A DNA stretch of 64,000 nt, from the IMG/VR virus record IMGVR_UViG_3300044625_001067, positions 62,001-126,000 of that record, one strand, 5' to 3'. Of the stretch, positions 1 to 47,595 are shown piece after piece. How positions within the stretch are numbered: the stretch's first letter is position 1; each line of letters begins with the position of its first letter. The notes under the pieces were generated by a model that did no database searches, was not told the DNA's origin, and saw nothing but the letters and a program-made list of their open reading frames with translations. A program made the position numbers and the translations under genes.

Positions 1-137
1 CCAAGTAGAAAAATTGGCACAAGGGTTGGTGAAAGCACTGTGAGCCAGGGCCAGGAAACCTGACCCGTTACTTTCATAGTCATGAATACGGTTTGCAGAA
101 CGATGCAGAGGGCACCCGGCAATTTGATCCAGATCAT
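1..137 (-). CDS. Small membrane protein, partial (runs off window start)
   Basis: ATG at 137 overlaps the stop of the upstream gene (ATGA); reads MIWIKLPGALCIVLQTVFMTMKVTGQVSWPWLTVLSP..., hydrophobic. Confidence 0.6.
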   Translation of the reverse strand, partial: MIWIKLPGALCIVLQTVFMTMKVTGQVSWPWLTVLSPTLVPIFLL

Positions 138-8845: not shown

Positions 8846-9979
8846 ATGAGAAATTGCTACACATACAGAGTGGGTTGGTCCCGGTTCAATAAGTACTACT
8901 ACGGAGTTAGATTCGCCAAAGGATGTCACCCTGCTGACCTTTGGGTTGCCTATTTCACCAGCTCCCGGCATGTAAAAGCATTTAGAAAAGTTCACGGGGA
9001 GCCAGATATCCTAGAAGTGAGAAAAACTTTTGGAGACGAACCTAAAAAGGCAGCCGAATGGGAACAAACTGTTTTACGAAGACTAAACATAGAGTTCAAC
9101 GAACTATACTTAAACAGAAGCCGAAAGAACGCTTTCGGGGCCAAGGGGGCGCCATGGAATGTGGGTAGAACCAAGGAGAATTGCCCCGTGACACATTTAA
9201 CTGCGGAGAAGATTAGCAAGACTAGAAAAGGTTTTAAAGCCTCAGAAGAAACTAAGAAGAAACTGTCTATGGCTGCAAAGGGAAGAGCCGAAGAAAATTC
9301 CTGGAAGCAGCTATTAAAAAGTCCAGCAATTAGAAACAGATTTCACTCCTATAAACATTTCTTAGTTGAGATAGAAAACCTATACGAGTCTTGTTGGGGT
9401 ATCGCGGAGGTCATTTCAAAAGCCCTGGGAGTAAACGTCAGAGGCGTTGCTAAAGCCCTAGAGCGCCTAAATCTGACTTCTTTGAACGACCAGCAGAGAA
9501 CTAAAGTGTATAATAAGTACGGGAACAGGTTCTCTAGTTACAGCGACTACTGCATAAGTATCTTGGTTTTACATCTCAAGGGCTACACTCCCAGTCAAAT
9601 TGGTAGTCAGTTGGATGTGAATGAATGCGGAGTGGGGAACCTTCTTCTCAGGGTTGATTTAACCCCAAACAAGGCCAAAACGGGACCGTCAAAGCCCGCT
9701 TTTAAGAAGGTACTGATTGCTGATGCTCTTGAAGCTAAAAGCACCACATTCACTCTTGAAGACAATCCCCTCCCGGAGAGTCTTATTGTTAAGTTGAGAG
9801 AAACCGTCTGCCATACCGAGGATCTCTTCCACACCCATATCCTTTATAGAGAAGCTTCCCAACACAGGGACGTGGCCCAAACCAAATTGATCGCAAAAGT
9901 TTTTCCTTTCCAGGGGGGTCATGTACCTCCCCATATCCGTAAGGTAGACATCAAAAACAAAGAACTTGAAGTCATTTAG
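8846..9979 (+). mobile_element. Free-standing GIY-YIG-like homing endonuclease gene with NUMOD3-like motif
   Basis: YTY..YYYGVR N-terminus, YFTSS, conserved E (AAEWE) and YLN, SEETKKKLSMAAKG; only large plus-strand ORF. Confidence 0.75.
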
Positions 9980-20959: not shown

Positions 20960-21010
20960 GTTCCGGAGTGAAGGTGAGATTGAGGGGGTTATAGGGATGC
21001 TCACACCCAT

Positions 21011-21053
21011 ACTATATCTTTTTATTACGAAAAGGGTAAGGGGGAAACCGCCC
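21011..21053 (-). promoter_or_regulatory. Repeated early promoter element
   Basis: GGGCGGTTTCCC box, TTACCC-17-TATAGT. Confidence 0.7.
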
Positions 21054-21419
21054 TATAGGTCCTCAGGACCATGCAAGGGGGCGGAGGAAAGCTCAAGTAG
21101 TCTCTTCACAGTGTCTCCGTGACAACGCTTTGGCGCACAAAAGCAAATTAGCTCCAGGGACTTCACGCTCGGATCTTGAACAATCGCGAGAAACTCTTGA
21201 AACTGCGCAAGTTCGGCACCTTTCTGAAGTAGCCTTGGAGGCAACCACTCTTCGTAACCATCGCAGACGCGGTCTCTCTCGACCTGGCTAGAGTCCTTCA
21301 TCGGCAGCGGATTTCCAAGGGCAGTCCCTCGGTGAATAGCTCGGCGTACGACACCCTCGGGGGGGGGGCTTCGTCTCTCGCCCCAAGTGGTACTTGTTTA
21401 CAACTTTGATTTTTGACAC
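21053..21419 (-). pseudogene. DUF4326-family protein, frameshifted in a C10 tract
   Basis: IKVVNKYH N-terminus; removing one C from 21359-21368 gives IHRGTALGNPL...RDRVCDGY...LICFCAPKRCHGD. Confidence 0.8.
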
Positions 21420-23669: not shown

Positions 23670-24782
23670 TCAGGCAATCCCGAGCAAAACGTCGAGCTTT
23701 TTCGGGGTTAAACCTTCGAGCCACTCTGCAAAGGATCCGACTTTGCCGGATCGAATCGCAAAGCATGCTCCAGAAAGTTCTTTTGACTCGGCAAGTACGG
23801 CTTGAGCGAAATCCTTCTGGTTAAGATGGTTGTGAGCCCTCATGTTCTCGCTCACCGCACTCTCCATCACTTCGATGGAACGCAGGTGAACGTCAAAACC
23901 CCCACGATACTCGGGAAAGTGAAGCAGAAACTCTTCCAAGTCGTCGTTCAGGAAAAGCTCGGAGAAATCCGGTTCGCCGTTTCCTTTAACCCTGTGCAAC
24001 TGGCAATATACGTTGGACTTGTCTTTCTGCCGGTTTCCCTTCCCATCGACAATAATCACTCCTTCAGCGGTACCACGAGAAGAGTCGTTTACAAACTGGG
24101 TTACAGCTTCATGTGAGCGCAGGTCGTAGGTCTGAGCGATATTGAATCGGTTCTCAAAGTACTTGAGATCCTTTTCGTTCAGGTCATCTATTACGCTACG
24201 GACCGTTAAGAGAGGTAAAAGGGGAGTCTCGTAGTCTACAACAATTTTGTTGTCTTTGTGGCACAACTCGTAGACGTAGACAAAATAAGGGTCGAGGTCA
24301 GCCCGGTCATATTCAACTTCATTAAAAACGTGCCAAAACAAGTCGGAGAAGGAGCGGCCCGTGGTCCCGACTTCTGAAGAACCAGCGACTGAACCTGATG
24401 TTGATACCAACCACTCTCCTTTATAGTTGAACAACTTGATCAGAGACCCGTCGTACTTCTCAGCTACACGGGCAGTGGACCAATCAATCTCTGCGGCGTA
24501 ACCCTCCCCGACGTTGAAGAAACGGTCGAAGGCGTACGCAACCAGCCGAAAGTACGGGGAGCCCGTACCATCGTCAACGAGTTCGACTACGGCACCACGG
24601 CAGGCACGAACGATCGGCAGTGCCTTGTCCGCCATCACACTGCCGTACTTTAAGTTGTAGAGAGCAGGGTAACGTTCGTCGCGAGCAACACGAATGTCGT
24701 GCTCGGCAAGTGCTTCAAAAGCAGTCTCGACCCGGTAGTTTAACCAGTCGATTAGAAAGTGGCGCAGGTTTAAAGGTTCCAT
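23670..24782 (-). CDS. T4 Rnl1-like RNA ligase
   Basis: CRGAV, FDRFFN, motif I EKYDGS, YEL, EGVII. Confidence 0.9.
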   Translation of the reverse strand: MEPLNLRHFLIDWLNYRVETAFEALAEHDIRVARDERYPALYNLKYGSVMADKALPIVRACRGAVVELVDDGTGSPYFRLVAYAFDRFFNVGEGYAAEIDWSTARVAEKYDGSLIKLFNYKGEWLVSTSGSVAGSSEVGTTGRSFSDLFWHVFNEVEYDRADLDPYFVYVYELCHKDNKIVVDYETPLLPLLTVRSVIDDLNEKDLKYFENRFNIAQTYDLRSHEAVTQFVNDSSRGTAEGVIIVDGKGNRQKDKSNVYCQLHRVKGNGEPDFSELFLNDDLEEFLLHFPEYRGGFDVHLRSIEVMESAVSENMRAHNHLNQKDFAQAVLAESKELSGACFAIRSGKVGSFAEWLEGLTPKKLDVLLGIA

Positions 24783-24837
24783 GGCAGCTTTAGGTGGGTG
24801 GGACCGTTGAGTTTTGTTTATCTGGGCAAGGTTGGGA

Positions 24838-25467
24838 CTAGCGATTTCGTTTCCCACTGTCCCAGGCTGGCGCTGATCTCCGCTTTGGAAAGTCATGTCC
24901 AAGATCGCCTTTTACTTCCCCGTTAGCGAGGACAACAAGGTGGTCTGTGCCGTAATCGTCCCAGTCGTCGGAGAACTTCGTGTCTACTGACAGAGTAACC
25001 TTGTGCTTGTAAAGAACTTGGCCGAGATCCTTTCTAAACTCGTCCATGTCGAACTTTTCGCCAGGGGTGTACGCGTAGGACGTAACTACTTGGTCTCGAA
25101 GGAGCTGGTCCCAGTCGAGGCAGTTGTACGGGAGTTTTGTCTCTGACATGTCTTCCGGGGAGAAGCAGCTTCGTAGTGTTCTGTGATTACGCCGTTCATT
25201 CGTCCAGGTTCGATCCTCACGGACTCTTACCAGAGTGTAGCAGTATGAGGATGGAACGTTCGGGTTCGTTGCTTTCGGGTGCATCCAGATGTCGGACACA
25301 ACGTAGAGACCGTCTTTTACTGGACTCTTCCGAAAGTGAAGGTAAGGAACTTCAGTGCCCCAGGTTCGACCGTCGGGTGAATTTTTAAGTATTTTTCCAG
25401 GAACAAACACACTGTCCCCTGGCTTCAGCAAAAGTTTTCCTGTAACTGATTCAGGGGGAGACTTCAT
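24838..25467 (-). CDS. Hypothetical protein
   Basis: ORF behind promoter 25495; start moved to ATG 25467. Confidence 0.65.
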   Translation of the reverse strand: MKSPPESVTGKLLLKPGDSVFVPGKILKNSPDGRTWGTEVPYLHFRKSPVKDGLYVVSDIWMHPKATNPNVPSSYCYTLVRVREDRTWTNERRNHRTLRSCFSPEDMSETKLPYNCLDWDQLLRDQVVTSYAYTPGEKFDMDEFRKDLGQVLYKHKVTLSVDTKFSDDWDDYGTDHLVVLANGEVKGDLGHDFPKRRSAPAWDSGKRNR

Positions 25468-30867: not shown

Positions 30868-32382
30868 CTAAGCTGCGGGGTTAAGAAGTCGAGTACGAAT
30901 GTTAGGCAGTGAGTTTACATCCTCCCCGTAAACCACGCTGTTTAAGAACACGGTGCGAAGCTCGCCTCGCTGCTCTTGCTCACGAGTCTGCTGTTGATGA
31001 AGAACAAAGTTCTCCCCATCCTTTTCAACTCGCAGTAGACCCAACGCCGACTTTTTCGTGCCGCGATCCGTAATGGGATCCTTCATGGTTTCGACGGCGA
31101 GACCGTTAATTTGCCCCCAGGTTGTTTTGTAAGCAATACCGAACGTGTCTCGTGTATGGTATTGGTAGGTGTAAGAACCGATACCAAACACAATGTTTTC
31201 GGACGCCCACCCAAGCTGCCTCATGTGCTCTAGGATGGCCCTGGCCCGTGGAAGAGTGATTGAGTCGCCGTAAATTAGGCCAACTCGAGGGTTCAGTACC
31301 TTGAAACCCTTCTCGTTTATCGTTCCTCCGAAGACCTCCCAGAGAAGCTCAAGCGAGCCTTTGTACTCTCGGCTACCTAGCTCAGCGTCAGCGTCACCGC
31401 AGATGATTTTCTCAGGGTTACCGCTGTCGGGACGGAAGACGACCTTAGCGATGCCCTGAGAATTCGGACAACGATTTAAGATGTCTTCCTTAAGTGCGGG
31501 TGCAATAACAGTCAGTGCATCCCAGTAGTTCCAAGTGTCAAAAACTACACTGACCGGCCCAGTTGGGTATACTTTTGTAATAATTCGACGAATTGTCTCT
31601 AATTCGTTTCTTTGACCGCCAAGGCAGGTCACACTGTGTTCCGTAGCGGGAATACTACCACCAATGAAATTGGACCCACAATCGTAGTAATCTTCCAAGT
31701 AGTCAATGGAAAGGATTGTATCCGTGCCCTTGAAAGAAAAAAGGTGTCCGATATTGTGTGCAGCGGCATCGTAAATGCCTCCGACTCCGCGAGCGGAGAA
31801 GTCGTGCCCCTGAAAGTCAACAAACTGCGGATTACTCCCTGTGATTTCAGCGTAGTGGTCGAGAAGACGGCGAAACTCGTAGGCGATGGTTGCCACGTTG
31901 ATGGCCTTCCACAGCTCAGACGACTTGGCGGTTTCGACATAGTTGGTTAGCCACGGGGCCAGCCACTTGAAGTCATTGTGAGTGTTTTGCGCCGTCAAAA
32001 ACGGCACTCCAATGTTAACACGGCTACCCTCGGGCAGTGCCTTCACATGTAGCGGCATGTAGCCCAGGTCGTGAAGCTCAGCAATGTGGTCAGTGCCGAC
32101 AACACCTTCTCCGAGCGAGGAGTCCATTCGCCGCTTGTATTTGTCCAACACCTTGGCCTTGGGTTGCTGAAAAAAGGTCTCATTCCAAAGATCCCTCAGC
32201 ATCCATTTCATTGTCCCCTGGATGTTGGCCACGACGATCTTGTGGTCGAAGTCAGCGGGCATGTTCGCCAGACGGTCGGACCTTGCCGTCATGTTGGCGT
32301 AGATTACTTCGGTGCCTTCAGGGTTTTGCGAAGGGTGTCCTGTCTTGTAAAAGTCGGTTGCGTGGGGCGCAAAAATTTTCAT
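30868..32382 (-). CDS. Nicotinamide phosphoribosyltransferase-family protein (Nampt/NadV; Namat candidate)
   Basis: TDFYKTGH, HDFSARG, GTDT, PATEHSV, RPDSG, IYGDSIT, FGIGS, KDPITD. Confidence 0.92.
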   Translation of the reverse strand: MKIFAPHATDFYKTGHPSQNPEGTEVIYANMTARSDRLANMPADFDHKIVVANIQGTMKWMLRDLWNETFFQQPKAKVLDKYKRRMDSSLGEGVVGTDHIAELHDLGYMPLHVKALPEGSRVNIGVPFLTAQNTHNDFKWLAPWLTNYVETAKSSELWKAINVATIAYEFRRLLDHYAEITGSNPQFVDFQGHDFSARGVGGIYDAAAHNIGHLFSFKGTDTILSIDYLEDYYDCGSNFIGGSIPATEHSVTCLGGQRNELETIRRIITKVYPTGPVSVVFDTWNYWDALTVIAPALKEDILNRCPNSQGIAKVVFRPDSGNPEKIICGDADAELGSREYKGSLELLWEVFGGTINEKGFKVLNPRVGLIYGDSITLPRARAILEHMRQLGWASENIVFGIGSYTYQYHTRDTFGIAYKTTWGQINGLAVETMKDPITDRGTKKSALGLLRVEKDGENFVLHQQQTREQEQRGELRTVFLNSVVYGEDVNSLPNIRTRLLNPAA

Positions 32383-33320
32383 GGTTGGTTGCGTGGGGTG
32401 GGGTAGTTTTCGGTACGAAGGTAGGTCAAGTACGAGGGTAACTCTTGGTAAAAGGCTTTATACGGGAGCAAGTTCGCAACGAAAAAGTTGTCGATTAAGC
32501 TCCCAAACACCTTAAAACCCTTGGAGAAAATTCCGTGAGTTACATAGAGGTCAATTCGAGACGGGTCGAACTGACGTAGCACCTTGGCGAGTTCGATAAA
32601 GGTGCGACCGCCATCGCAGATGTCGTCCACAATCAGAAGGTTTTTGCCCTTGTAACTGACGTCTTCTGGAACTTCCGTCCTTAGGATTTGCCCGTCTTCA
32701 GGGTTGCGAACTTTCGTAGCGTACACTACAGAGTGGAGCCCCAGTGTTTGTTGTACGAGGGTTGCTCTTTCGACTGCACCTTTATCCGGAGCAATCACAA
32801 TTGTCTCAGCACTAAACTCTTGCCCCCGGTCTTTGAACTTCTGGAGAAACAGTTGGGGTTGTAGGTTGTTGAACTCGCAGCCGATTTCGGTTCGAAAGAG
32901 CTCATTTGCAACGTGGCTGTGCACGTCCCATGTGTACACCCGGTCGCACACTCCCTTAAGATAAGGGGCGAGAGCTTTTACAAAAGTTCTTAGCGAAAAC
33001 GCTTCCCCTTCAGCGCACTGGCGGTCTTGGCGGCTATAAGGTAAGTACGGGATGTCCAATTGTAGACTTCGCAGCACAGGAAGGTCTTTGATGGCCGACA
33101 GAGTCAGAAGAAGTTCTGCGAAACTTTCTCCGCTGTGTATGTCTGCGTCTACGATAATGTCAGTCGAATTTGTTGGAGTGTCGTGCAACCGGACCTGCCT
33201 TTCACCGGCACTGAACGTAAAGGAGGTCTTTGAAATCTTGTACAGGTTTTGTCCGTCGCGATTCGAGTAAACCTCAATCGGCTCTGTTTTCTGATACTCT
33301 TTAGTTTCGGTCACGTGCAT
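32379..33320 (-). CDS. Ribose-phosphate pyrophosphokinase-like protein (Prs family; Adps candidate)
   Basis: FSAGE, PYLPYSRQDR, DVHS, APDKGA, IVDDICDGGRTF, VTHGIFS; ATGA-coupled to the Nampt-like gene. Confidence 0.92.
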   Translation of the reverse strand: MHVTETKEYQKTEPIEVYSNRDGQNLYKISKTSFTFSAGERQVRLHDTPTNSTDIIVDADIHSGESFAELLLTLSAIKDLPVLRSLQLDIPYLPYSRQDRQCAEGEAFSLRTFVKALAPYLKGVCDRVYTWDVHSHVANELFRTEIGCEFNNLQPQLFLQKFKDRGQEFSAETIVIAPDKGAVERATLVQQTLGLHSVVYATKVRNPEDGQILRTEVPEDVSYKGKNLLIVDDICDGGRTFIELAKVLRQFDPSRIDLYVTHGIFSKGFKVFGSLIDNFFVANLLPYKAFYQELPSYLTYLRTENYPTPRNQP

Positions 33321-37203: not shown

Positions 37204-38124
37204 CTAGTCGAGTTCAACGACAAGAACGCCGTCTTCTCTTTTTGTAACTTTGCGAACGGTTTGTTCGGTGTTTCGAGGTAAGATAGCCTCATTTTCATAA
37301 GGTACATCAGAATACATGTTTACCGGAGTTAAACTTCTATTCTTTGAGACAAACAAGACACTTCTAGACGTTCTGGAAGCACCAAGGAAACCATTTGCAG
37401 TCTTTTCGTCTAAGGAATAGGACCCGAAACCGGGGTCTTTTAGAACGGACCCAGGGGTCAGTTTTTCCACTTGGGCGTACAAGTCAGCGGATTTTAACGG
37501 GAAATTAACCCCACGATAGAATGAGATACCTTCATTGTTTTTCGGGAGCTTACCTAGAGCTGAATCAAATTCTTTTACAAACTCCTTAGTGATCTCAGGT
37601 TTTTTGCAAGTGGGAGGGTTTCTTAAACAGGCGTTAGTCTTTTTGTGCGGGCGGTCAGACATGTCTGAGGGGGCTGTGTAGTCATAAACGGATTTAGCCT
37701 CCGCGCTACTTAGCTTAACCTTTCTTTGTGCTTCGTTTATCCTTGTAAGGACTTCTTCATGTGTGTCTTTCTTTGACACCTTTTGTTGGTTGTCCTGTGC
37801 TAGCTTATCTGTAAGCTTTTCGAGAGAGGAGTTCAGTTCAATGGGTATCTTTTTACTTGGCTTAACCTTCGCCCCGGTACTCTTTGTTTTTCTCGGCGTC
37901 TTAGTGGCTTTCGCACGCTTAGGCTTTTTAGTTGCCACCTCTTTCGCTTGCTTTGTACCTTTCCTGCACTTTCCAGAAGTCCCGTACGCAGTACCGTCCT
38001 CTCGAACACAACGAGTGTAGTCGTACGGCTCTAAGCCTAGCTCAGAGAAGTTACAGGACGATAGTGCTCCAACCATCTCTTCGCACTTCCTTAGCGATTG
38101 CTCTGAAAAAGACCCTTGGCTCAT
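37204..38124 (-). CDS. Tag-fused ADP-ribosyltransferase (R-S-E clade, VIP2/Alt-like)
   Basis: N-terminal RCVREDGTAYGTSGKCRKG tag; C-terminal FYRG, GFGSYS, ENEAILPR. Confidence 0.85.
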   Translation of the reverse strand: MSQGSFSEQSLRKCEEMVGALSSCNFSELGLEPYDYTRCVREDGTAYGTSGKCRKGTKQAKEVATKKPKRAKATKTPRKTKSTGAKVKPSKKIPIELNSSLEKLTDKLAQDNQQKVSKKDTHEEVLTRINEAQRKVKLSSAEAKSVYDYTAPSDMSDRPHKKTNACLRNPPTCKKPEITKEFVKEFDSALGKLPKNNEGISFYRGVNFPLKSADLYAQVEKLTPGSVLKDPGFGSYSLDEKTANGFLGASRTSRSVLFVSKNRSLTPVNMYSDVPYENEAILPRNTEQTVRKVTKREDGVLVVELD

Positions 38125-38195
38125 AACTGCGACTACTCTTATAAACAAACTTACCCCTAATGCACCCACGACGGGGGTGAGTTTTCAATGAGGAC

Positions 38196-38351
38196 TCACA
38201 GAGTCGATTTGTATCGGTTCAACCCTTTCAGAAAGGTTTTCATGTCTGGGGCCTGCGCAGCATCCTGTCGAAATTGCTCGCGGGAATCAGCTGCAATATT
38301 CTGAATGAGTGCCGCGAGAGTGCGACTGGTTGTGGGGTCGTTAAGGTTCAT
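38196..38351 (-). CDS. 51-aa helical protein coupled to the upstream ART-like gene (not in ORF track)
   Basis: MNLNDPTTSRTLAALIQNIAADSREQFRQDAAQAPDMKTFLKGLNRYKSTL; ATG 1 nt after the upstream stop. Confidence 0.65.
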   Translation of the reverse strand: MNLNDPTTSRTLAALIQNIAADSREQFRQDAAQAPDMKTFLKGLNRYKSTL

Positions 38352-38352
38352 T

Positions 38353-39552
38353 TTAGTCCGGTGTTAATTCAGGGTCGTTCGCTACGATGATTGCTCCACG
38401 GTTGAGAACAACCCAGAAGTCTTGGCCATCGGTCTGTGGAACTCTATACGCATGTATTCCCAGAGATGCAGCGGCTGACCCCACATCGTGATGGTCGTAC
38501 CCCGTAATCTCTCTTGCTTTCTGCAGGGTCTCTCCTTCCCACTGCCTAAACTGCTTCCCGTCTCCCTCAAACTGTACGAGTCGAGCGTCGGACCGGAATG
38601 CAAACGCTGAAACCCTTAGTGTTTTATTTCCACTTTCCCCAGAGTAGTCTTTCGCTGTATCTTGGGCCCATCTATCATGCTTAACCTTGCCAGATAAAGG
38701 GGAAGAAGCAGAGTAACTCCCACTCCCGTAAATCCCGCCACCAGGAAAGTGCTTGTCTCCGTCTGGACCACCACCTTTGAACTGCAAGGAAAACTCATTT
38801 GAACCTACGCCGCGATAAGCCACAATTGGCCTTCCGTCGGGGTTCCGGGCTATATCTTTTCTTGATTCCAGTTCCGATCGTGTTGCAACAACCTCCGGTC
38901 GAGCATGAAAACCTTGCCGTTCGTACACAGAAGTGAGAATCGGCGGTAACAAGGTGCCCTTGCGAGCACTCGAAAGTGTTCGACCGAGCTCCATACCTTC
39001 CTTTTGCAGATGTAAAAGCTTCTCTCTTGACACGTCGTCGGTAGGCTCTCCTATTGCTCGGACTCTTTTCTTCAGTGCTTCAAGTTCCTTTTCGAGAAGC
39101 TCAACCTCTTTCTCAACCGTGGCTTTCAGTAAAGGTTTGCTCGATCCAGGTGTTTGCGTGTACTTCGGCGAGTTTCTCACCAATTCGTCGTATTGATCCT
39201 GAAGGGCACCCTTTTGTTGTGTTTGCTCTGCCTTCTTCGCCAAGTGAGTCTTTAGGCGAAGATACCGTAAGGCGGTAAGGGCACTCTCTGTGAGGGGTGT
39301 GCGGTACCCTGGCTTTGACAAAAGCATTCCCTCAAGAGTCCTTAGATTCTTGTTTAGAGCGTCAGGATCATTCTTTTCGTAAATCTTGACATTTTTGAGA
39401 ACAGACTCTCTTCGAGTGCTACGGTCTTCTTTTGCGGACTCCACTCCCTTGCGACATTGTCCTGCTGTACCGTACACCCCACCGTCCGGTTTCACACAAC
39501 GTGTAAAGTCGTGCACAAACGCTAGGGTATCGGGGGAAATTTCTCCGTACAT
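38353..39552 (-). CDS. Tag-fused protein with C-terminal ART-like fold
   Basis: N-terminal RCVKPDGGVYGTAGQCRKG tag, coiled coil, then AYRG...GGGIYGSGSY...AKDY...WVVLNR. Confidence 0.65.
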   Translation of the reverse strand: MYGEISPDTLAFVHDFTRCVKPDGGVYGTAGQCRKGVESAKEDRSTRRESVLKNVKIYEKNDPDALNKNLRTLEGMLLSKPGYRTPLTESALTALRYLRLKTHLAKKAEQTQQKGALQDQYDELVRNSPKYTQTPGSSKPLLKATVEKEVELLEKELEALKKRVRAIGEPTDDVSREKLLHLQKEGMELGRTLSSARKGTLLPPILTSVYERQGFHARPEVVATRSELESRKDIARNPDGRPIVAYRGVGSNEFSLQFKGGGPDGDKHFPGGGIYGSGSYSASSPLSGKVKHDRWAQDTAKDYSGESGNKTLRVSAFAFRSDARLVQFEGDGKQFRQWEGETLQKAREITGYDHHDVGSAAASLGIHAYRVPQTDGQDFWVVLNRGAIIVANDPELTPD

Positions 39553-39582
39553 TCGTACAACCGAACTAAGCACCAGGGTACT

Positions 39583-40018: not shown

Positions 40019-40062
40019 ATTATACGTTATTTCAGAGTAGAAACAAGGGGGGAAACCGTCCC
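40019..40062 (-). promoter_or_regulatory. Repeated early promoter element
   Basis: TTGTTT-16-TATAAT, GGGACGGTTTCCC box. Confidence 0.7.
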
Positions 40063-40887
40063 AAACGAAAGGTCGTACAAAGTGCTCGCTATGAGCAAAA
40101 GTCTTTCGCTGTCGTGCAACCCCGAAACCCATCGCTTAGGAATAGCCTTGTAACCGTAGTAAGCACCTGCTAGCTGCCCCGTAATCGCAGCAACCGTGTC
40201 TGAGTCGTCCCCGTAGTTCACAGCCTGCAGGATGGCCTCTTCAAAGGACGAAGTTGACCCAAAGTGGTAGAGTGCGGCGTTTAAGGACTTCGGTGCGTAC
40301 CCGGAATTTTCAATTCCCTCCGGCGAGACTTCAGGTTTTCCCCCCGTGCCATTTAAGTATTGGTGCAGCAAACGACCGAGATCTTTGCATAGGTCGGATG
40401 CCAAGTGGCCATGGGTTGTTGATGATGACGCGTCACACGCTGCTACAGCGTCCTGCTCACTTGACTTGTGGTACACAATAGAAACGGGGGATAAACGCAT
40501 CAAAGACCCGTTTCCTTTCGAATTCTCCGGATAGAGACTCAAAGACCCCTCAACGAGAAAAGTCTCAATTGCACGAAGTGTTCCATTGCCGATGTCAAAA
40601 CAGACACCTGTTGAGCTGTTCCTTCCGTACTCGTACCAGTTGGAGTACCGACGCATTTGGTCTCCAAGATTGATCTGCCCATTGCAATGAATAAAAGACT
40701 CGGCAAGGCAAACAGCCTGCGATGTGTCGTCCGTCCAGTAGCCTGACGGCAGATTAAAGGGCCCCCCTGCTCGGTAACCTGTGACGGTCTCAAAGGTCCC
40801 CGGTGGAGAGAACTCCACTGGCGCACCCATCGCGTCACCGATCGCAAGGCCAATAAAGGCTCCGAGGCATTTGTCGAAAGTTGTCAT
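40027..40887 (-). CDS. ADP-ribosylglycohydrolase (DraG/ARH family)
   Basis: GLAIGDAMG, WTDDT, GNGSLMR, TTH, GDDSDTVAAITGQLAGA. Confidence 0.93.
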   Translation of the reverse strand: MTTFDKCLGAFIGLAIGDAMGAPVEFSPPGTFETVTGYRAGGPFNLPSGYWTDDTSQAVCLAESFIHCNGQINLGDQMRRYSNWYEYGRNSSTGVCFDIGNGTLRAIETFLVEGSLSLYPENSKGNGSLMRLSPVSIVYHKSSEQDAVAACDASSSTTHGHLASDLCKDLGRLLHQYLNGTGGKPEVSPEGIENSGYAPKSLNAALYHFGSTSSFEEAILQAVNYGDDSDTVAAITGQLAGAYYGYKAIPKRWVSGLHDSERLLLIASTLYDLSFGTVSPLVSTLK

Positions 40888-40977
40888 TTTTCCTTGTATG
40901 GTTCTTGTTTGAGCGGGCTTGCTTGGGTGGATATAAGACCCAAGGTAAGGGTTAGAGTCTCGCACCATGGGCAAGGG

Positions 40978-41727: not shown

Positions 41728-42328
41728 TTAGTGGGATGCTAGTATGGCAAACGCATCAAGATTGTCGTAAGTTTGAGAACGTCCCCAGTGGTTTATGGCG
41801 TCCTTGTCCCACCAATCTGAAGGCAACACATCGGAACCAATTCTAGGACCAAACTCAGTTACTAACCAACTTTCTCTGTCGTAGTCCCAAACTGAGTTCG
41901 AAAGCTCTATTTGTTCGGCTATATACCTTCTTCCGTCTGGCCCCTCAGCAACAACAACTTCATACTCGGTCCAACCTCCGTGAAACTCCTCTCGCCGCTT
42001 CTTCAGCGTTTTCCACTTTCTGCCTTAGGTCAAGGACGATGCAGGCAAAGTTCTTAAATACTTTCTCTTGAGACTCGGACAAGTTCGTCCAGTTAATTCC
42101 CGCGTCGCTCGTCGGATTCGGGGTGACCTCTTCGGTGTTCAAACCAGACAAGATCTCCCGCATGACCTGGTGTGTGTCCCACTCCACCTTAAACCGGTAG
42201 AAGTCTTCTGAACTTTTGAAATCTGCCCAGTTAAATACACCGTAGTTTCGTATTTCTACGGGGTCCAACATTAGTTTCTTGGCCTTTTTCTTTCCTGAAG
42301 GACTAAGGGCCTTTAGTTCAAGGTTCAC
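41728..42328 (-). pseudogene. Hypothetical protein, probably frameshifted
   Basis: ORF 41960..42328 overlaps a ~100-codon open +1 frame with no early start codon (WKTLKKRREEFHGGWTEYEVV...ILASH) ending at 41728. Confidence 0.5.
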
Positions 42329-42384
42329 AGTGTTTCAGCGTGGGTTGGAGTGTAGGGTGCTGTTTTGGCTAGGAAAGTTGGCGG

Positions 42385-42715
42385 TGTAAGGGGGCCGAAA
42401 CCCCCGAGTTATGAGTCAGAGTGCGGTTGCTCAAACGGCAACGGCAATCCTCTCGAATTTGACGATGTTGTTAGCGTCTATTTTGTGCTTATGCAAGCGG
42501 CTTTCACTCAGGCGACATCTTTACCCTAGCGAGACCATGGCACCCCCTTGACTAGAGGTGGGAGTTTAACCCACAGTGACCCTGCCTTCTCAGTAAGTCG
42601 GAAGGTTGAAGAAGGGACGGTCACGTTCTCAAATGGAGGTGAGGGGATTCGAACCCCTGTATAGGGCACTATCTTCCAGAGCTACACCCAGTTTAATGTC
42701 GTGTGGTAGGACTGT
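42385..42715 (-). ncRNA. ssrA: Permuted two-piece tmRNA (outer ends approximate)
   Basis: T-arm AGGGGTTCGAATCCCCT plus CACCTCCA (ends 42634) precedes the 5' strand GGGGGTG (starts 42547), giving G3.U70; tag ORF 42431-42475 ANNIVKFERIAVAV*. Confidence 0.9.
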
Positions 42716-44358
42716 CCGCCTAATAAACTTCTATGCTTAGCCCACTCGTTTCAGGGGTGGGTGTTGACCAGGAGCCTATCCCTATGCAAGCTCCGGACGG
42801 TAAAATGAGTTGCAGGTATTCTCCGCCATGTGAACCCTGGCAGCCTTTAACCTCCGAGTAAGAGTAGCTCAGAATGTCTCTATTTTCTACCAACTTTTCA
42901 AGGTCCCCTTCAATCATGAGCGGCAAGCCCCGTAAGTATCGGTTTCACGTCGTATTTTCGTACTAAAAGCGCCAAAAGCTCTTTCTTCAGCCCCTCAAAC
43001 CCACCTACAATTTGGTCCTGGGGAACAGCGTAGCAGGGTCCAACCTTCGTACCCGCCCAAGGGATAACCTGCTTCGTTTCGAGTATCTCTTTTCGGTACT
43101 TCATAAGCAGGTCATCAACTTCGATCATCAGAGTGAGCTGGGGGTCGGGTTGGCTGGATTGCCTCATTTTAACAGTGTAGTTAGTGCTAAGTGAAAGTAA
43201 ACCGGAGCATGCCGTCAAAACTCCTTCAGTAGAGCCGATGTGGAGAAATCTTGGCCAGCTTGAGAGTTTATCAGCACACACTCTGCTTGCACAGAAGGGT
43301 GCCAGAATCCTTTTATCTCAGAAAACGGGACGTAGTTTTCCCTGGCCCAGCTACGAAAAGAGTCCTCTTCTTCAGCTGTGAGACTACGATAGAGTTCCAT
43401 GGACTTTGAGGGAGTTACCGGAGAGTGTTTTTAGTGTAGTCAAAACCGGGACTTCTGGCGAAAGACCCTGCTTCGGGAGACCCTGAATAGAGCAGAGAGG
43501 GATAGTGCCAAAATTATCAGGATCCAGAGGCCATCCACAACTGTGCTACTCAGGGCTATGGGGTCTCCCAAGGTCTGCGAGGGGACTTCAGTCTGAGTCT
43601 GGTGACGCTTTTCCATTTGATGAGAAGGGCGGAGTAAGCAGTGTGGGGTTGAATGGAATGAGAACCTCGGACCAGAAGGAGTCACCGTTGGGGCACTTGT
43701 AGAGAAACTCCCAAGTTTGTGTCCCAACACTTTGTGCTCCAGCGATTAACTTGCAGCTTTCCTCTGTGACTTTCTGAGCGTCCTTTGACCAGAAAGGTCT
43801 CCACCCCTCCGGGTGGTATGCGAAAGCAGGTTGTGCCGAAGAAAACGAGCATAGGGCGCAGAGGGTTAAACTCAGTATAAACTTCATGGGGCAGGATTAA
43901 AGGACAAGATCCCAGTTCGGGTCTCCCGAAAGGTCGACCCACACGCAGTACCCACTCTTGGAAGAGACAAGTACTTTGTTGCCAGTGCGTTTTTCCAGCC
44001 GAACGGCGCTGTCACCGCCCATAGACTTTTCCAGGGCTGCCCTGGCTTTGTTTGACCGGGGGACTAAGCGCATTCCTCCATCTCAGGGTGGTACAGCGGA
44101 GTGGTAAGACTCCCCCAGTTATCGCCCAGGAAGGCCAGGAACCCTGGGACAAGAGTGTCGTTGTAGAAGGGGTCTAGGTCCTCTGGGACTCGGCTATAAG
44201 CCGTGGGGCTCAGCTTCATGAGCTGGTTAACAAGGTGCTGACCCCACCGAATACCCTGGGTCTGAGGCTGGTTAGAAGCCCATTCGACAAATTCCTGAAA
44301 GTCCATTGGATCTCCTGAGTTGAGGGCTAAGTGTCTGAGCACCGCTGCTCATGTAAAT

Positions 44359-44450: not shown

Positions 44451-44918
44451 TCAGGCGAAGGAAGGCTCAAGGAGTAACGATAGCATTTCCTGTATGGTCG
44501 CGTAGATGGGATCTTCAACTGTAAAGGCGAACTTTTCGGTTGCCTTGTCGTCAATCCACTCTCTCACTCCTGTTCCGAACTCGGTGGACCTTGCGTACCA
44601 ATCGCAAACCATCTCCGCGACGTAAACTTTGGGCATGTCGTGAATGCTCCCCCAGTATTCAGGGTGGTGCGGGTTCACTGACTGATGGTGTTTTACGACT
44701 TCGGACAGCAAGGGGTCTGAATGAAAAAGGTGTGCAAACTCAATTCCCTTAAACTTTGAATTGTCATGGATCTGCCCGTTTGCGATTAAGTTGCGCCCCA
44801 GCTCAATGTCGCCGCGTTTCATTAGCTTCAGGCCAAGCTTGTAACAGCTCCTTTGCACGTTTTTTATGTGCGAGAAAACCAACTCAATTTTTTCGACGGC
44901 TTCGGTCTCAATTGTCAT
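44451..44918 (-). CDS. HD-superfamily hydrolase (DUF5662-like)
   Basis: HIKNV, HDNSKF, HHQSVNPHHPEYW, EMVCDW. Confidence 0.8.
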   Translation of the reverse strand: MTIETEAVEKIELVFSHIKNVQRSCYKLGLKLMKRGDIELGRNLIANGQIHDNSKFKGIEFAHLFHSDPLLSEVVKHHQSVNPHHPEYWGSIHDMPKVYVAEMVCDWYARSTEFGTGVREWIDDKATEKFAFTVEDPIYATIQEMLSLLLEPSFA

Positions 44919-44959
44919 GGGAGTAGTATGCATTCGCACAGAAAATGTTACCCTTGCGC

Positions 44960-46102
44960 TCACCGGTTCTCAATACAACCGAGACTTTGAAATTTTTCCA
45001 CAGTCTCAGCACAGAGAGTGTTGATGAGTTGGTCATCTACCGTGTTCGGCAAGACGCACTCGTTCTTCCCCACGTGCTCAGCCTCCTTAAAGAGCTGAGT
45101 TACAATTGTGCTTAGTTCGTCATACGTAATCCTGCCGTACTTAATGTCCAGAAGAAAATCTGCGTCCCCAACCAACTTTCTATTCACAAGAAGCTCTCCG
45201 GTTCGCATTCCCTCAATGGCCATTTTCATAAGTCGAACACAGTGGCTGGCGTTCTTCCCGTCGTACCCACAGGCCCGCTCAATTTCGGATCGCTTCACAT
45301 TCCGATTAGTCAACCAATCTTGGTAATTACTCCACCGTTTTAAATCTGACCGGTACTGTTGGCTTGAGTGGAGAAGGGCCATGTACTCATCGCTTGCTCT
45401 CGTGATTTTCTGTGTTTCATTGAAGCACTCCTCCGGTAAGACACTCTGCTTCAAAATTCCTTTCCAATCAACACGGTCGTTGAGAAGCTCGTACAGCTCG
45501 ACTGAAGGTTGGTAGTACTCGATTCTGTCTTTAATCAGCAAGTACAAGTACTCGATGAAAGACTCGATTTGAGACGGGGTTAAGCTCGGGGAAGAGACAC
45601 CGTAGTCCTCCCACTCCGGTCGCCGTGTTGGAGGGTTTAAGAGCCATTTGCGGTGAGTCTCCATTTTCTTGATCTGGGACCTTGCGTACTGAACGAATGT
45701 GCCAGAGATTCTCCTGGAAATTAGCTTCCTCCGGTTGTCAATTAGCGACTGCCCCAGAAAGTCAAGGTACAGGTAGCTGTCGGGAGTCTGCCAGAGCATC
45801 TCCAAAATGTTGGGGTTTTGCGACCGCAACAAGCTCAGGTACCTGCGAATGCCGTACACCACTGAATCCGAGTTATCTAACTCAGGGAATCTAGAGTTGA
45901 ACTCACCCTCGTCTTGTTGCTCCCCTACCCACCCCTTATCCTTTTGCTCAAATGTTTCGAGAGTGGTGTAAAACCGCTGTGGCGCCACACAGATTCCCTT
46001 AAAGTCCAAGTCGGACATCTCGGTGTTGAGGCCATAGGCGTGGCTGCCTGACTTGCAAAACAGGATCATCCCGTCTTCAATTTCTTTTCGTGTAATTGTC
46101 AT
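44960..46102 (-). CDS. Pol-beta-superfamily nucleotidyltransferase (RlaP/YcgL-like)
   Basis: GSHAYGLNTEMSDLDFKG, NPNILEML, GYDGKNASHCVRL. Confidence 0.88.
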   Translation of the reverse strand: MTITRKEIEDGMILFCKSGSHAYGLNTEMSDLDFKGICVAPQRFYTTLETFEQKDKGWVGEQQDEGEFNSRFPELDNSDSVVYGIRRYLSLLRSQNPNILEMLWQTPDSYLYLDFLGQSLIDNRRKLISRRISGTFVQYARSQIKKMETHRKWLLNPPTRRPEWEDYGVSSPSLTPSQIESFIEYLYLLIKDRIEYYQPSVELYELLNDRVDWKGILKQSVLPEECFNETQKITRASDEYMALLHSSQQYRSDLKRWSNYQDWLTNRNVKRSEIERACGYDGKNASHCVRLMKMAIEGMRTGELLVNRKLVGDADFLLDIKYGRITYDELSTIVTQLFKEAEHVGKNECVLPNTVDDQLINTLCAETVEKFQSLGCIENR

Positions 46103-46986: not shown

Positions 46987-47595
46987 TCAGGAGCTGCCGA
47001 GGACAAAACGTACGAATCGCTTCACAACTATGTTTTCGCCAACTATTGCAGCGAAGTTCTTCACGTATGTTTCGATACTCATTGAGTTGTCTTTGATGTA
47101 GGGCTGGTCCATGAGAGACAGCTCTCTGAATCGCTTTGCCACACGACCCTCAACGATCTTGTTTTGAATTGCCTCGGGCTTCTTCACAAGGTCTGCCTTT
47201 CCGGACTCAATCCGAGTCTCCTCAAGGAGAGTCTCCTCAGGGATATCAAAGATTGAAACGTGGCACACAGAGGGGCACGCTGCAATTTGCATCGAAAGAT
47301 TTCGAACAAGTTCCTGAAAGGGTTCGGACTTGGCCACAAAGTCCGTTTCGCAGTTGACCTCGATAAGGACTCCAACCTTACCGCCAGTGTGAATGTAGCT
47401 ACCCACAGTACCTTCTCGTGCGCTCCGACCGATCTTTCCGTCAGCCAGGGCGACTCCTTTCTGCCGCAGCCACGTGATCGCACCGGCCTCATCACTGTCA
47501 GACAAAATAAGTGCTTCTTTGCAGAGAATCAGGCCCGCACCGGTCTTCTCTCGCAGGGACTTAACTTGTAGGATTGTTGGAGGGGTGGAAGCCAT
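46987..47595 (-). CDS. tsf: Translation elongation factor Ts (short cyanobacterial-type)
   Basis: VKSLREKTGAG..CKEAL, SYIHTGGKVGVLIEVNCETDFVA, GENIVVKRFVRF. Confidence 0.95.
   Translation of the reverse strand: MASTPPTILQVKSLREKTGAGLILCKEALILSDSDEAGAITWLRQKGVALADGKIGRSAREGTVGSYIHTGGKVGVLIEVNCETDFVAKSEPFQELVRNLSMQIAACPSVCHVSIFDIPEETLLEETRIESGKADLVKKPEAIQNKIVEGRVAKRFRELSLMDQPYIKDNSMSIETYVKNFAAIVGENIVVKRFVRFVLGSS

What the first reader, a model, noticed from the sequence alone, without database searches (positions are those of the whole stretch)
42385..42715. Phage-borne permuted two-piece tmRNA with a tag ending AVAV
Seen: the acceptor piece precedes the coding piece with an 86-nt intervening segment (42548-42633), G3.U70 is intact, CCA is not encoded, and the tag is ANNIVKFERIAVAV. 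Established: permuted tmRNA with ANNIV-type tags characterises the Synechococcus/Prochlorococcus lineage, and ClpX recognises terminal Ala-Ala. Inference: host-lineage marker. The altered terminus may rescue ribosomes while changing or weakening degradation of tagged proteins.
Basis: partly seen in the sequence, partly recalled or inferred. Interest (0 to 1): 0.6.

Follow-up and report, generated by a model that had tools for sequence, protein, structure and literature searches.

The report
Cyanophage tmRNA with an altered tag
A 277-kb lake cyanophage carries its own two-piece ribosome-rescue RNA (tmRNA) from a lineage found here only on phage contigs, and its tag ends in a conserved Ala-Val-Ala-Val instead of the host family's almost invariant Val-Ala-Ala degradation signal.

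Summary
It lies on the minus strand. ARAGORN and Rfam both call a permuted tmRNA. G3·U70 and A73 are intact, CCA is not encoded, the intervening segment is 86 nt (42548-42633), and the tag is ANNIVKFERIAVAV.

The record is a jumbo cyanomyovirus. It has sheath, portal and TerL genes, psbA and 49 tRNA genes, but no SmpB. It recurs in lake-water metagenomes.

The gene is not a recent host copy:
- It scores 54.7 bits on the cyanobacterial model, against 274-327 bits in 138 host-family species.
- It carries a hairpin signature found on 100 viral contigs and in no cyanobacterial species genome.
- One tree split separates all 138 host sequences from all 78 phage-type sequences.

Covariation shows that the RNA fold is under selection: 19 base pairs carry changes on both sides, and G3·U70 is kept in 13 of 13 sequences.

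Host tags end in AA in 137 of 138 species, and none ends in AV. Phage-type tags end in AA in only 15 of 78. AVAV is kept in 12 coding variants, with synonymous changes only.

Best reading: a working phage tmRNA that uses host SmpB and carries a retuned, probably weaker, degron. Processing, charging and tag stability remain untested. Phage permuted tmRNAs were already listed in the literature; the shift in tag ending appears to be undescribed.

The parts
42385..42717 (-). Whole permuted tmRNA gene (precursor): acceptor piece, intervening segment, coding piece
   Evidence: ARAGORN 42340-42723; RF04321 42431-42689 at 67.9 bits; RF01851 42390-42714 at 54.7 bits
42698..42717 (-). Conserved 5' leader (GGACAGUCCUACCACACGAC) upstream of the acceptor piece; its role is unknown
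   Evidence: Nearly identical in S-CBWM1 and L160
42662..42682 (-). 5' strand of helix P2, which pairs with the coding piece and holds the two pieces together
   Evidence: Rfam alignment. Its 7-pair core (helix 4) is 100% paired with 6 covarying pairs; the two short flanking segments (helices 2 and 3) are paired in only 59% and 76.5% of cells
42642..42658 (-). T arm AGGGG-UUCGAAU-CCCCU
   Evidence: 100% paired, 4 covarying pairs in 13 phage sequences
42634..42641 (-). Acceptor 3' strand CACCUCC plus discriminator A73 (42634); followed by UUU, so there is no encoded CCA
   Evidence: Sequence; U70 invariant in 13 of 13
42548..42633 (-). 86-nt intervening segment, expected to be removed on maturation; folds into two hairpins
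   Evidence: Fold -26.8 kcal/mol, z -2.1. Unique in the genome and found only in near-identical L130 and L187. Lengths of 4-90 nt occur in other phage and host copies. In a ~95% relative, 7 of the listed differences fall here, against 3 in the acceptor piece and 2 in the coding piece; 36 further differences over the 2-kb stretch were not shown
42541..42547 (-). Acceptor 5' strand GGGGGUG (mature 5' end, expected RNase P site); G3 at 42545
   Evidence: acceptor helix 100% paired with 3 covarying pairs
42529..42540 (-). D-loop analogue CCAUGGUCUCGC; departs from the host consensus cAAUGGUUUCGA at 3 positions
   Evidence: Rfam alignment; alignment A4
42506..42528 (-). 3' strand of helix P2
42487..42498 (-). 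Hairpin GCUUGCAUAAGC just 5' of the resume codon; part of the phage-lineage signature TGAAANCNGCTTGNATAAGCA
   Evidence: 100 viral contigs match. There were 23 matches in 185,579 species genomes, none cyanobacterial, and none in 138 host tmRNAs
42431..42475 (-). Tag reading frame GCU...GUU UGA = ANNIVKFERIAVAV*
   Evidence: codon comparison
42418..42453 (-). Helix 5 analogue: a stem-loop holding the last tag codons, with the stop codon in its loop
   Evidence: the Val codon GUU/GUC/GUA is compensated on the 3' strand (pair 262-274)
42390..42405 (-). Terminal hairpin GGGGGUUUCGGCCCCC, the likely 3' end of the coding piece

Best explanation
It is a working, phage-encoded two-piece tmRNA, inherited within cyanophage lineages rather than recently copied from a host.

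Inferred pathway:
1. The precursor is transcribed with the surrounding minus-strand genes.
2. The coding piece is cut at G1 (42547), presumably by RNase P.
3. The acceptor piece is trimmed after A73 (42634), and the 86-nt spacer is discarded.
4. CCA is added, by the host enzyme or by the phage's own PolyA_pol-family nucleotidyltransferase.
5. Host AlaRS charges the RNA through G3·U70 and A73.
6. With host SmpB and EF-Tu, the RNA enters ribosomes stalled on broken mRNAs during infection. It frees them and adds ANNIVKFERIAVAV to the nascent chain.

Shown: the gene's anatomy, selection on the RNA fold, selection on the peptide end, the separation from host tmRNAs, and the absence of SmpB in the phage.

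Inferred: processing, charging and use in infection. I put these together at about 0.8.

Also inferred: the conserved AVAV end retunes the fate of tagged proteins relative to the host's ...PVAA. The most likely effect is slower ClpXP-type degradation, so that ribosome recycling is kept while less protease capacity or phage protein is lost. I put this step at about 0.45.
For: - Detection and anatomy.
- Fold under selection in 13 phage sequences: 93.8% of cells paired, against 43-50% when partners are slid. 19 pairs carry changes on both sides. Acceptor stem, T arm and the 7-pair core of P2 are 100% paired. G3·U70 is kept in 13 of 13.
- Peptide under selection: 12 distinct coding variants ending AVAV show at least 7 third-position changes and none at first or second positions in the last four codons, (1/3)^7 = 5e-4. 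One Val-codon change is compensated in helix 5.
- Host contrast: 137 of 138 host-family tags end AA, against 15 of 78 phage-type tags, Fisher p = 1e-38.
- Phage-lineage gene: the hairpin signature occurs on 100 viral contigs and in no cyanobacterial species genome. RF01851 gives 54.7 bits here, against 274-327 bits in hosts. One split, support 0.93, separates all hosts from all phage-type sequences. TerL and the tmRNA both point to S-CBWM1 as the nearest isolate.
- Translation and RNA-repair setting: 49 tRNA genes, 44 of them without CCA; a PolyA_pol-family enzyme; EF-Ts; an RNA ligase; RlaP.
- The phage has no SmpB, EF-Tu or ClpP, so it depends on the host for these.
- A terminal Val weakens an ssrA-type tag in a cyanobacterium (PMC2860132).
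Against: - There is no direct evidence of expression as two pieces. Contigs from four RNA libraries cover the gene and run across the spacer without any joint. They could be precursor RNA or contaminating DNA.
- The score is below the curated cut-off of the cyanobacterial family.
- The D-loop analogue departs from the host UUUCGA motif in this subgroup, and one post-tag element of the host model is missing. Either could impair SmpB or ribosome use.
- No promoter-like or terminator-like site was found.
- AVAV is still a small, non-polar C-terminus and may be as good a degron as VAA in the real host.
- The viral set was collected with the hairpin pattern itself. Viral contigs that carry host-like tmRNAs without that hairpin would therefore have been missed.
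Confidence: 0.6

Rival explanations
1. The RNA works as a tmRNA, but the AVAV end changes nothing. It is as good a degron as VAA for the host proteases. On this view the variety of phage tag ends reflects tolerance of any small non-polar C-terminus, or constraints from the helix that overlaps the last codons.
For: All phage-type ends stay small and non-polar: A or V at the last position and T, A, V, L or C before it. The last tag codons lie in helix 5, which does covary. AAV- and ASV-tagged EYFP is still reduced relative to untagged EYFP in Synechocystis.
Against: Hosts spanning GC 31-70% keep AA in 137 of 138 species, so the end is not freely tolerant in cells. AVAV itself is held by purifying selection at the amino-acid level while the nucleotides change. 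That argues for a specific requirement, not drift.
Confidence: 0.25
2. The RNA is a decoy. It titrates host SmpB, AlaRS or EF-Tu and blocks host trans-translation instead of rescuing ribosomes. This has been proposed for the tRNA-like-domain-only tmRNA of mycobacteriophage DS6A.
For: The phage has no SmpB of its own. The D-loop analogue is atypical. A truncated phage tmRNA-like molecule was reported to inhibit tmRNA (PMC4131195 and PMC11915505).
Against: A decoy needs no reading frame. Here the frame, the resume context, the stop codon and helix 5 are all conserved, and the peptide end is under amino-acid-level selection.
Confidence: 0.07
3. The gene is a recent passenger picked up from the host chromosome, for example by imprecise excision at the tmRNA attachment site. 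It would then be a host marker without a phage-specific role, possibly decaying.
For: tmRNA genes are common integration sites. Elements with a P4-type primase sit next to some host-type tmRNAs. The tag is of the host ANNIV type.
Against: It lies outside the clade of 138 host sequences. It scores 220 bits or more below any host copy. It carries the phage-only hairpin. It shows compensatory evolution among phage relatives. No record in 50,697 phage genomes has a host-like copy above about 78% identity.
Confidence: 0.05

Closest known systems
Two-piece (circularly permuted) tmRNA of marine and freshwater picocyanobacteria (Rfam RF01851 cyano_tmRNA; Gaudin et al. 2002, cited in PMC1242208)
   Same: Gene order: acceptor piece, spacer, coding piece. 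A 7-pair acceptor stem with G3·U70 and A73. No encoded CCA. Helix P2 joins the pieces. The resume codon is GCN and the tag opens with ANNIV.F.R. The stop codon sits in the loop of a helix-5-like stem-loop.
   Different: 54.7 bits against 274-327 bits in hosts. The tag has 14 residues rather than 16 and ends AVAV, not PVAA. The hairpin before the resume codon is GCUUGCAUAAGC rather than the host GCUCGGUUAGAGC type. One post-tag element is missing. The D-loop analogue is altered. The gene sits in a phage that lacks SmpB.
Permuted tmRNA of Synechococcus phage S-CBWM1 (NC_048106; listed as 'Permuted' in Table S1 of PMC9004378; not annotated in the record)
   Same: Nearest isolate for both the tmRNA (79% identity over the core; same clade, support 0.97) and TerL (60.5%). 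It shares the leader and the hairpin signature, and its tag end is also not AA.
   Different: The S-CBWM1 tag is ANKIVAFHRQAVSCA. It keeps the host-like post-tag structure (123 bits on RF01851). Its spacer is shorter, and its genome is 139 kb.
Permuted tmRNAs of T4-like marine cyanomyoviruses (S-SSM7, S-CAM1, S-CAM3, Sf-FS3)
   Same: The same phage hairpin signature and the ANNIVAF core. Most ends are not AA...ELVTA in S-SSM7 and ...ELATA in Sf-FS3. All are unannotated in GenBank.
   Different: They carry about 30 extra nt before the ANNIV codons, and ARAGORN reads these as a longer tag (AKTSDTA-ANNIV...). S-CAM1 keeps ...TVAA. They belong to another phage family, Kyanoviridae.
Two-piece tmRNA of OM43 phage Melnitz and the pelagimyophages (PMC9004378)
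   Same: A phage-borne permuted tmRNA in an aquatic myovirus. The authors proposed that it maintains translation or tags host proteins.
   Different: It is of alphaproteobacterial type and is linked to a glutamine riboswitch. No riboswitch or other Rfam family was found here.
One-piece tmRNAs of mycobacteriophages (Bxz1 group) and the tRNA-like-domain-only form of DS6A (PMC4131195)
   Same: tmRNA genes carried by large phages that lack SmpB.
   Different: They have the standard, non-permuted gene form and other host phyla. The DS6A form has no tag frame.

Membership tests
tmRNA (general) | tRNA-Ala-like acceptor stem with G3·U70 and discriminator A73 | tested here: met
   GGGGGUG (42541-42547) pairs with CACCUCC (42635-42641); A73 is at 42634. 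G3·U70 is kept in 13 of 13 relatives.
tmRNA (general) | T arm with a canonical T loop | tested here: met
   AGGGG-UUCGAAU-CCCCU at 42642-42658; 4 covarying pairs.
tmRNA (general) | Short reading frame that starts at an Ala resume codon and ends at a stop codon | tested here: met
   GCU...UGA at 42431-42475, aligned codon for codon with host tags.
tmRNA (general) | Tag ends in the Ala-Ala degron | tested here: not met
   The tag ends Ala-Val. Hosts end AA in 137 of 138 species.
tmRNA (general) | Works with SmpB encoded in the same genome | tested here: not met
   PF01668 was not found in the 277-kb record; the control genomes were positive. Host SmpB would be needed.
Permuted two-piece tmRNA (RF04321) | Acceptor 3' half lies upstream of the 5' half and coding part, separated by a spacer; score over the gathering threshold | tested here: met
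   67.9 bits against 47; 86-nt spacer.
Cyanobacterial two-piece tmRNA (RF01851) | Score over the family's gathering threshold (70 bits) | tested here: not met
   54.7 bits. The post-tag helices of the model are not matched. 138 host species score 274-327 bits.
Cyanobacterial two-piece tmRNA (RF01851) | Tag of the ANNIV.F.R type | tested here: met
   ANNIVKFER....
Permuted two-piece tmRNA | Precursor is cut into two RNAs, receives CCA and is charged with alanine | tested here: inconclusive
   Contigs from RNA libraries span the spacer without joints. Contigs cannot show RNA ends, and DNA carry-over is possible. Charging cannot be tested with these tools.
Phage-lineage cyanophage tmRNA (group defined here) | Hairpin signature TGAAANCNGCTTGNATAAGCA 5' of the resume codon; placement outside the host clade | tested here: met
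   The window matches the pattern at 42487-42507; tree split with support 0.93.

The most novel reading that the evidence does not exclude
Cyanophages of at least three unrelated groups keep a private tmRNA lineage that was captured long ago: T4-like Kyanoviridae, S-CBWM1-like phages, and this 277-kb lake phage. In about four fifths of these sequences the host's invariant Ala-Ala degron has been replaced by clade-specific ends that are themselves conserved (AVAV, ATA, ATV, VAV, SCA). On this reading, phages rewire trans-translation during infection. Ribosomes are rescued, but the tagged products are spared, degraded more slowly, or sent to a different protease.
Probability: 0.35. Interest if true: 0.75.

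Novelty: new variant of a known kind. Interest (0 to 1): 0.58.

Why it matters
tmRNA couples ribosome rescue to destruction of the unfinished protein, and the C-terminal Ala-Ala is the best-conserved part of that signal. Here a whole family of viral tmRNAs keeps the rescue machinery under clear selection but replaces the signal with other conserved endings.

If the endings change the fate of tagged proteins, that is a natural experiment separating the two halves of trans-translation, and a new way for viruses to manage host translation and proteolysis. It is directly testable with cultured pairs such as S-CBWM1 with CBW1002, or S-SSM7 with WH8109.

There are two practical points. These genes are missing from the GenBank annotation of several well-known cyanophages. 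The phage hairpin signature also separates viral from cellular tmRNA in metagenomes.

Tried and rejected
- Promoter and terminator scan of 42150-43050: nothing found.
- Rfam at a permissive threshold over 42200-42900: only the two tmRNA families matched, so there is no riboswitch or other family in the spacer.
- The spacer as a repeat or mobile element: it is unique in the genome and in all loci except the near-identical L130 and L187.
- Unusual spacer length: rejected. Spacers of 4-90 nt occur in phage copies and 5-83 nt in host-type copies.
- Expression: contigs from four RNA libraries cover the gene, the spacer and the flanking genes alike, with no joints. No conclusion on processing is possible.
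- Relatives of a virus record cannot be drawn, and 'of' takes no taxon name.
- Two attempts to reach a cyanobacterial genome handle failed: through EF-Ts, then through the psbA of Synechococcus UW140. The third attempt succeeded, through the RNA methyltransferase gene next to a host-type tmRNA.
- Gaudin et al. 2002 is not held in the library.
- Mentions of tmRNA in three cyanophage papers were only ARAGORN citations or similar reference entries. The S-CREM1 paper does not mention tmRNA.
- Megablast of 24 kb of the window against phage genomes found no match.
- The first viral pattern scan and the metagenome pattern scan returned many unrelated tRNA-Ala genes and standard tmRNAs. Among them were bacterial contigs from gut metagenomes. 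These went through ARAGORN only and were not studied further. I took none of them for human DNA.
- Secondary weak RF01851 hits in three host genomes (G012, G007, G029) gave no credible second tag and were not pursued.

Full report
**1. The observation**

ARAGORN finds a permuted tmRNA at 42340-42723 on the minus strand, with tag ANNIVKFERIAVAV*. Rfam's merged permuted-tmRNA model RF04321 matches 42431-42689(-) at 67.9 bits (gathering score 47, E 6e-11).

- The T arm AGGGG-UUCGAAU-CCCCU lies at 42642-42658.
- It is followed by the acceptor 3' strand CACCUCC (42635-42641) and discriminator A (42634).
- The next bases are UUU, so CCA is not encoded.
- After exactly 86 nt (42548-42633) comes GGGGGUG (42541-42547). 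It pairs with the 3' strand over seven pairs, including G3·U70.
- The reading frame GCU AAC AAC AUC GUC AAA UUC GAG AGG AUU GCC GUU GCC GUU UGA occupies 42431-42475.

The only omission was the strand.

**2. The carrier is a phage**

The window is bases 62001-126000 of a 277,244-bp IMG/VR virus record estimated 98% complete.

- The record encodes tail sheath, portal, head-maturation protease, large terminase, a baseplate wedge protein, a tape-measure-like protein, DNA polymerase and topoisomerase II.
- It carries 49 tRNA genes besides the tmRNA.
- It has a psbA gene at genome position 272129-273208. The closest named relative of that gene is in Synechococcus sp. UW140, at 80% identity.
- Its large terminase is closest to that of Synechococcus phage S-CBWM1 (60.5%), followed by TIM5-like cyanophages at 32%.
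- The 2-kb stretch around the tmRNA is held nearly intact by lake-water and freshwater metagenome runs, with holders from 19 studies in all.

So this is a jumbo cyanomyovirus of lake picocyanobacteria.

**3. The gene is not a recent host copy**

Several independent results agree.

- The cyanobacterial model RF01851 gives only 54.7 bits here, below its cut-off of 70. The long spacer and unmatched post-tag helices account for much of the loss. S-CBWM1's copy scores 123 bits.
- In 151 species genomes of the family of Synechococcus KORDI-52, 138 have a match, at 274-327 bits.
- The window and S-CBWM1 share a hairpin just 5' of the resume codon (GCUUGCAUAAGC).
  - The pattern TGAAANCNGCTTGNATAAGCA hits 100 viral contigs.
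  - In 185,579 species genomes it hits 23 stretches, none cyanobacterial. Two of those (L226, L234) look like misbinned phage contigs: L226 carries a phage-type tmRNA, and L234 has the same length and match position as a viral contig.
  - None of the 138 host tmRNAs has the pattern.
- A joint tree of 138 host sequences, 25 sequences from metagenomes and 78 phage-type sequences has one split, support 0.93. It puts all hosts and 21 host-type metagenome sequences on one side and every phage-type sequence on the other.
- In the smaller tree, the window groups with L187, L160, L184, L125 and L172 (support 0.96), and then with S-CBWM1 (0.97). This matches the terminase result.
- No record among 50,697 phage genomes holds a host-like tmRNA above about 78% identity.

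The host-type metagenome contigs are cellular. The tmRNA there lies next to SMC and a THUMP-domain RNA methyltransferase, and the methyltransferase is 91% identical to proteins of named marine Synechococcus.

**4. The RNA is under selection as a tmRNA**

I mapped the window's helices onto an alignment of 13 phage sequences: the window clade, S-CBWM1 and the SFRRTAVAV clade.

- 93.8% of cells form standard pairs, against 43-50% when the partners are slid by 1-3 columns.
- 19 of 46 pairs have changes on both sides.
- The acceptor stem, the T arm and the 7-pair core of P2 are 100% paired, with 3, 4 and 6 covarying pairs. Two short outer segments of P2 pair less well, at 59% and 76.5% of cells.
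- G3·U70 is present in all 13.
- The stem-loop that holds the last tag codons and the stop codon also covaries. A GUU to GUC or GUA change in the third-last codon is matched on the opposite strand.

Spacers vary from 4 to 90 nt among phage copies and from 5 to 83 nt among host-type copies, so 86 nt is long but not exceptional. The spacer here is unique sequence with two hairpins. In a relative about 95% identical, seven of the listed differences over the 2-kb stretch fall in the spacer, against three in the acceptor piece and two in the coding piece. A further 36 differences were not shown.

**5. The tag ending**

| Set | Sequences | End AA | Other endings |
|---|---|---|---|
| Host-family species genomes | 138 | 137 (133 PVAA, 4 LVAA) | 1 PVLA; none AV |
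| Host-type sequences from the metagenome scan | 23 | 23 (all PVAA) | none |
| Distinct phage-type sequences | 78 | 15 | TA 29, AV 19, TV 10, LA 3, VA 1, CA 1 |

Fisher's test for the first and third rows gives p = 1e-38.

AVAV occurs in the window clade (KFER[I/T]AVAV), in a second clade (SFRRTAVAV) and once in the marine clade. The first two share the 3' part of the tag and helix 5, so the AVAV module is homologous there.

Among 12 distinct coding variants ending AVAV, the four last codons use GCC/GCT/GCA/GCG, GUU/GUC/GUA, GCC/GCU and GUU/GUC. That is at least seven third-position changes and none at first or second positions. The peptide end is therefore selected as a peptide, which also implies that the frame is translated.

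Cultured phages show the same trend:
- S-CBWM1 ends ...AVSCA.
- S-SSM7 ends ...ELVTA.
- Sf-FS3 ends ...ELATA.
- S-CAM1 keeps ...STVAA.

No isolate in the collection has the AVAV type.

**6. How it most likely works**

The phage has no SmpB, EF-Tu or ClpP, so the RNA must use host factors.

The phage does carry several translation and RNA-repair genes:
- a PolyA_pol-family nucleotidyltransferase, which may add CCA; 44 of its 49 tRNA genes, like the tmRNA, lack CCA;
- EF-Ts (46987-47595), an RNA ligase, and an RlaP-family nucleotidyltransferase.

This fits a phage that invests in keeping translation running while host and phage nucleases produce broken mRNAs.

I infer the standard two-piece pathway:
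1. RNase P cuts at G1.
2. The acceptor piece is trimmed at its 3' end and CCA is added.
3. AlaRS charges the RNA through G3·U70.
4. The RNA enters the ribosome with SmpB and EF-Tu.
5. The nascent chain is tagged and the ribosome is released at UGA.

The altered ending most likely retunes proteolysis. In Synechocystis, EYFP with E. coli-type tags ending AAV or ASV accumulates more than EYFP with LVA (PMC2860132). A terminal Val thus weakens, but does not abolish, such a tag in a cyanobacterium. That AVAV does so in the real host is inference.

**7. What is not shown**

- Processing and charging are untested. RNA-library contigs span the spacer and flanking genes without joints, and they may be precursor RNA or DNA.
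- The D-loop analogue (CCAUGGUCUCGC) differs from the host motif at three positions in this subgroup, and one post-tag element is missing. Function could be impaired.
- The viral set was gathered with the hairpin pattern, so phage copies lacking it are under-sampled.
- The tree is unrooted and built from about 310 columns.

**8. Comparison with what is known**

- Two-piece tmRNA in Prochlorococcus and marine Synechococcus is established, with northern evidence in PMC1242208.
- In 2014 the tmRNA Website listed phage tmRNAs only in mycobacteriophages and Bacillus phage G (PMC4131195).
- In 2022 Buchholz et al. found 53 two-piece tmRNAs in isolated phages, 50 of them aquatic. Their supplementary table lists S-CBWM1, S-SSM7 and S-CRM01, and their tree shows that cyanophage copies group with the cyanobacterial lineage (PMC9004378).
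- I found no paper in the held library that analyses the tag endings of cyanophage tmRNAs or their separation from host copies.

The gene type is therefore known. This copy is a new variant: a phage lineage with a conserved non-AA ending and a reduced 3' domain.

**9. Verdict**

The window's feature on its own is a member of a documented class. The pattern it led to, conserved non-canonical degron ends across a phage-only tmRNA lineage, is the part worth following up.

Noticed in passing
window 30868-33320 (-): Two overlapping genes: a nicotinamide phosphoribosyltransferase-like gene (30868-32382, phrog_448) and a ribose-phosphate pyrophosphokinase-like gene (32379-33320, phrog_619). From memory, this pair resembles the phage NAD+ reconstitution pathway NARP1 (Adps plus Namat), which counters NAD-depleting defences. 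In S-CBWM1, an NMN adenylyltransferase lies about 3 kb from its tmRNA.
   Followed up: partly
window 37204-39573 (-) and 40027-40974 (-): An ADP-ribosyltransferase (37204-38169; PF03496 and PF01129) sits next to a 406-aa protein with no family match (38353-39573). Both share an N-terminal motif, RCV.(P/E)DG..YGT.G.CRKG. An ADP-ribosylglycohydrolase follows (PF03747, E 3.5e-61). The set may form a writer/eraser pair acting on host proteins.
   Followed up: partly
window 46987-47595 (-): A phage-encoded elongation factor Ts (202 aa; PF00889, E 9e-30). The closest named relatives are cyanobacterial at about 61% identity. Unnamed relatives at 73-95% identity occur in metagenome assemblies, including a 282-kb contig and the 33-kb contig of L125, which also carries an AVAV-type tmRNA.
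   Followed up: partly
window 134-1612, 23670-24902, 44451-46102 (-): RNA-handling genes: phrog_850 'RNA-binding protein' (492 aa), an RNA ligase-like protein (phrog_562), an RlaP-family nucleotidyltransferase (PF10127), and DUF5662 next to it, about 1.7 kb upstream of the tmRNA.
   Followed up: no
genome G000:C1:30395-30814 (+), outside the window (locus L371): A PolyA_pol-family nucleotidyltransferase (PF01743, 68 bits; 273-aa frame), a possible phage CCA-adding enzyme. 44 of the phage's 49 tRNA genes, and the tmRNA, lack an encoded CCA.
   Followed up: partly
L184:1360-1669, L125:552-862, L172:72-382: Three relatives in the window's clade have a non-canonical T loop (GGCAGUA instead of UUCGAAU) together with a changed D-loop analogue (AAUCUAGUUUCG or AAGCUAGUUUCG). 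Their acceptor stem, G3·U70 and the AVAV tag are intact. The T loop and D loop may have co-varied.
   Followed up: no
L368 (S-SSM7, NC_015287 about 20967-21318), L369 (S-CAM1), L370 (Sf-FS3), L002 (S-CBWM1): The permuted tmRNA genes of these cultured cyanophages are not annotated in the records. In S-SSM7 the region is annotated as hypothetical protein SSSM7_025.
   Followed up: yes
L011, L068, L126 and most marine viral loci: Marine phage tmRNAs carry about 30 extra nt before the ANNIV codons. ARAGORN reads these in frame as a longer tag (AKTDTPA-ANNIV..., AKTSDTA-ANNIV...). It is unresolved which GCN is the true resume codon.
   Followed up: no
G012:C8:15487-15781, G007:C11:308429-308665, G029:C1:926930-927148: Three host genomes have a second, weaker cyano_tmRNA match (168, 94 and 66 bits). 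One lies 3 kb from the main copy. They may be remnants of island integration at the tmRNA gene. ARAGORN gave no credible tag for them.
   Followed up: partly
L248, L291 (metagenome contigs, GC about 0.40): Permuted tmRNAs with tag ANNIVSFSRQRVPVAA have an 83-nt spacer in L248 and no phage hairpin. They fall outside the host side of the tree, and their 405-409-aa neighbour ORFs gave no NCBIfam match. Their origin is unclear: a low-light Prochlorococcus, a genomic island or a phage.
   Followed up: no
window 8846-9979 (+): One of the few plus-strand ORFs in a minus-strand region has a weak homing-endonuclease match (phrog_314, E 6e-9).
   Followed up: no
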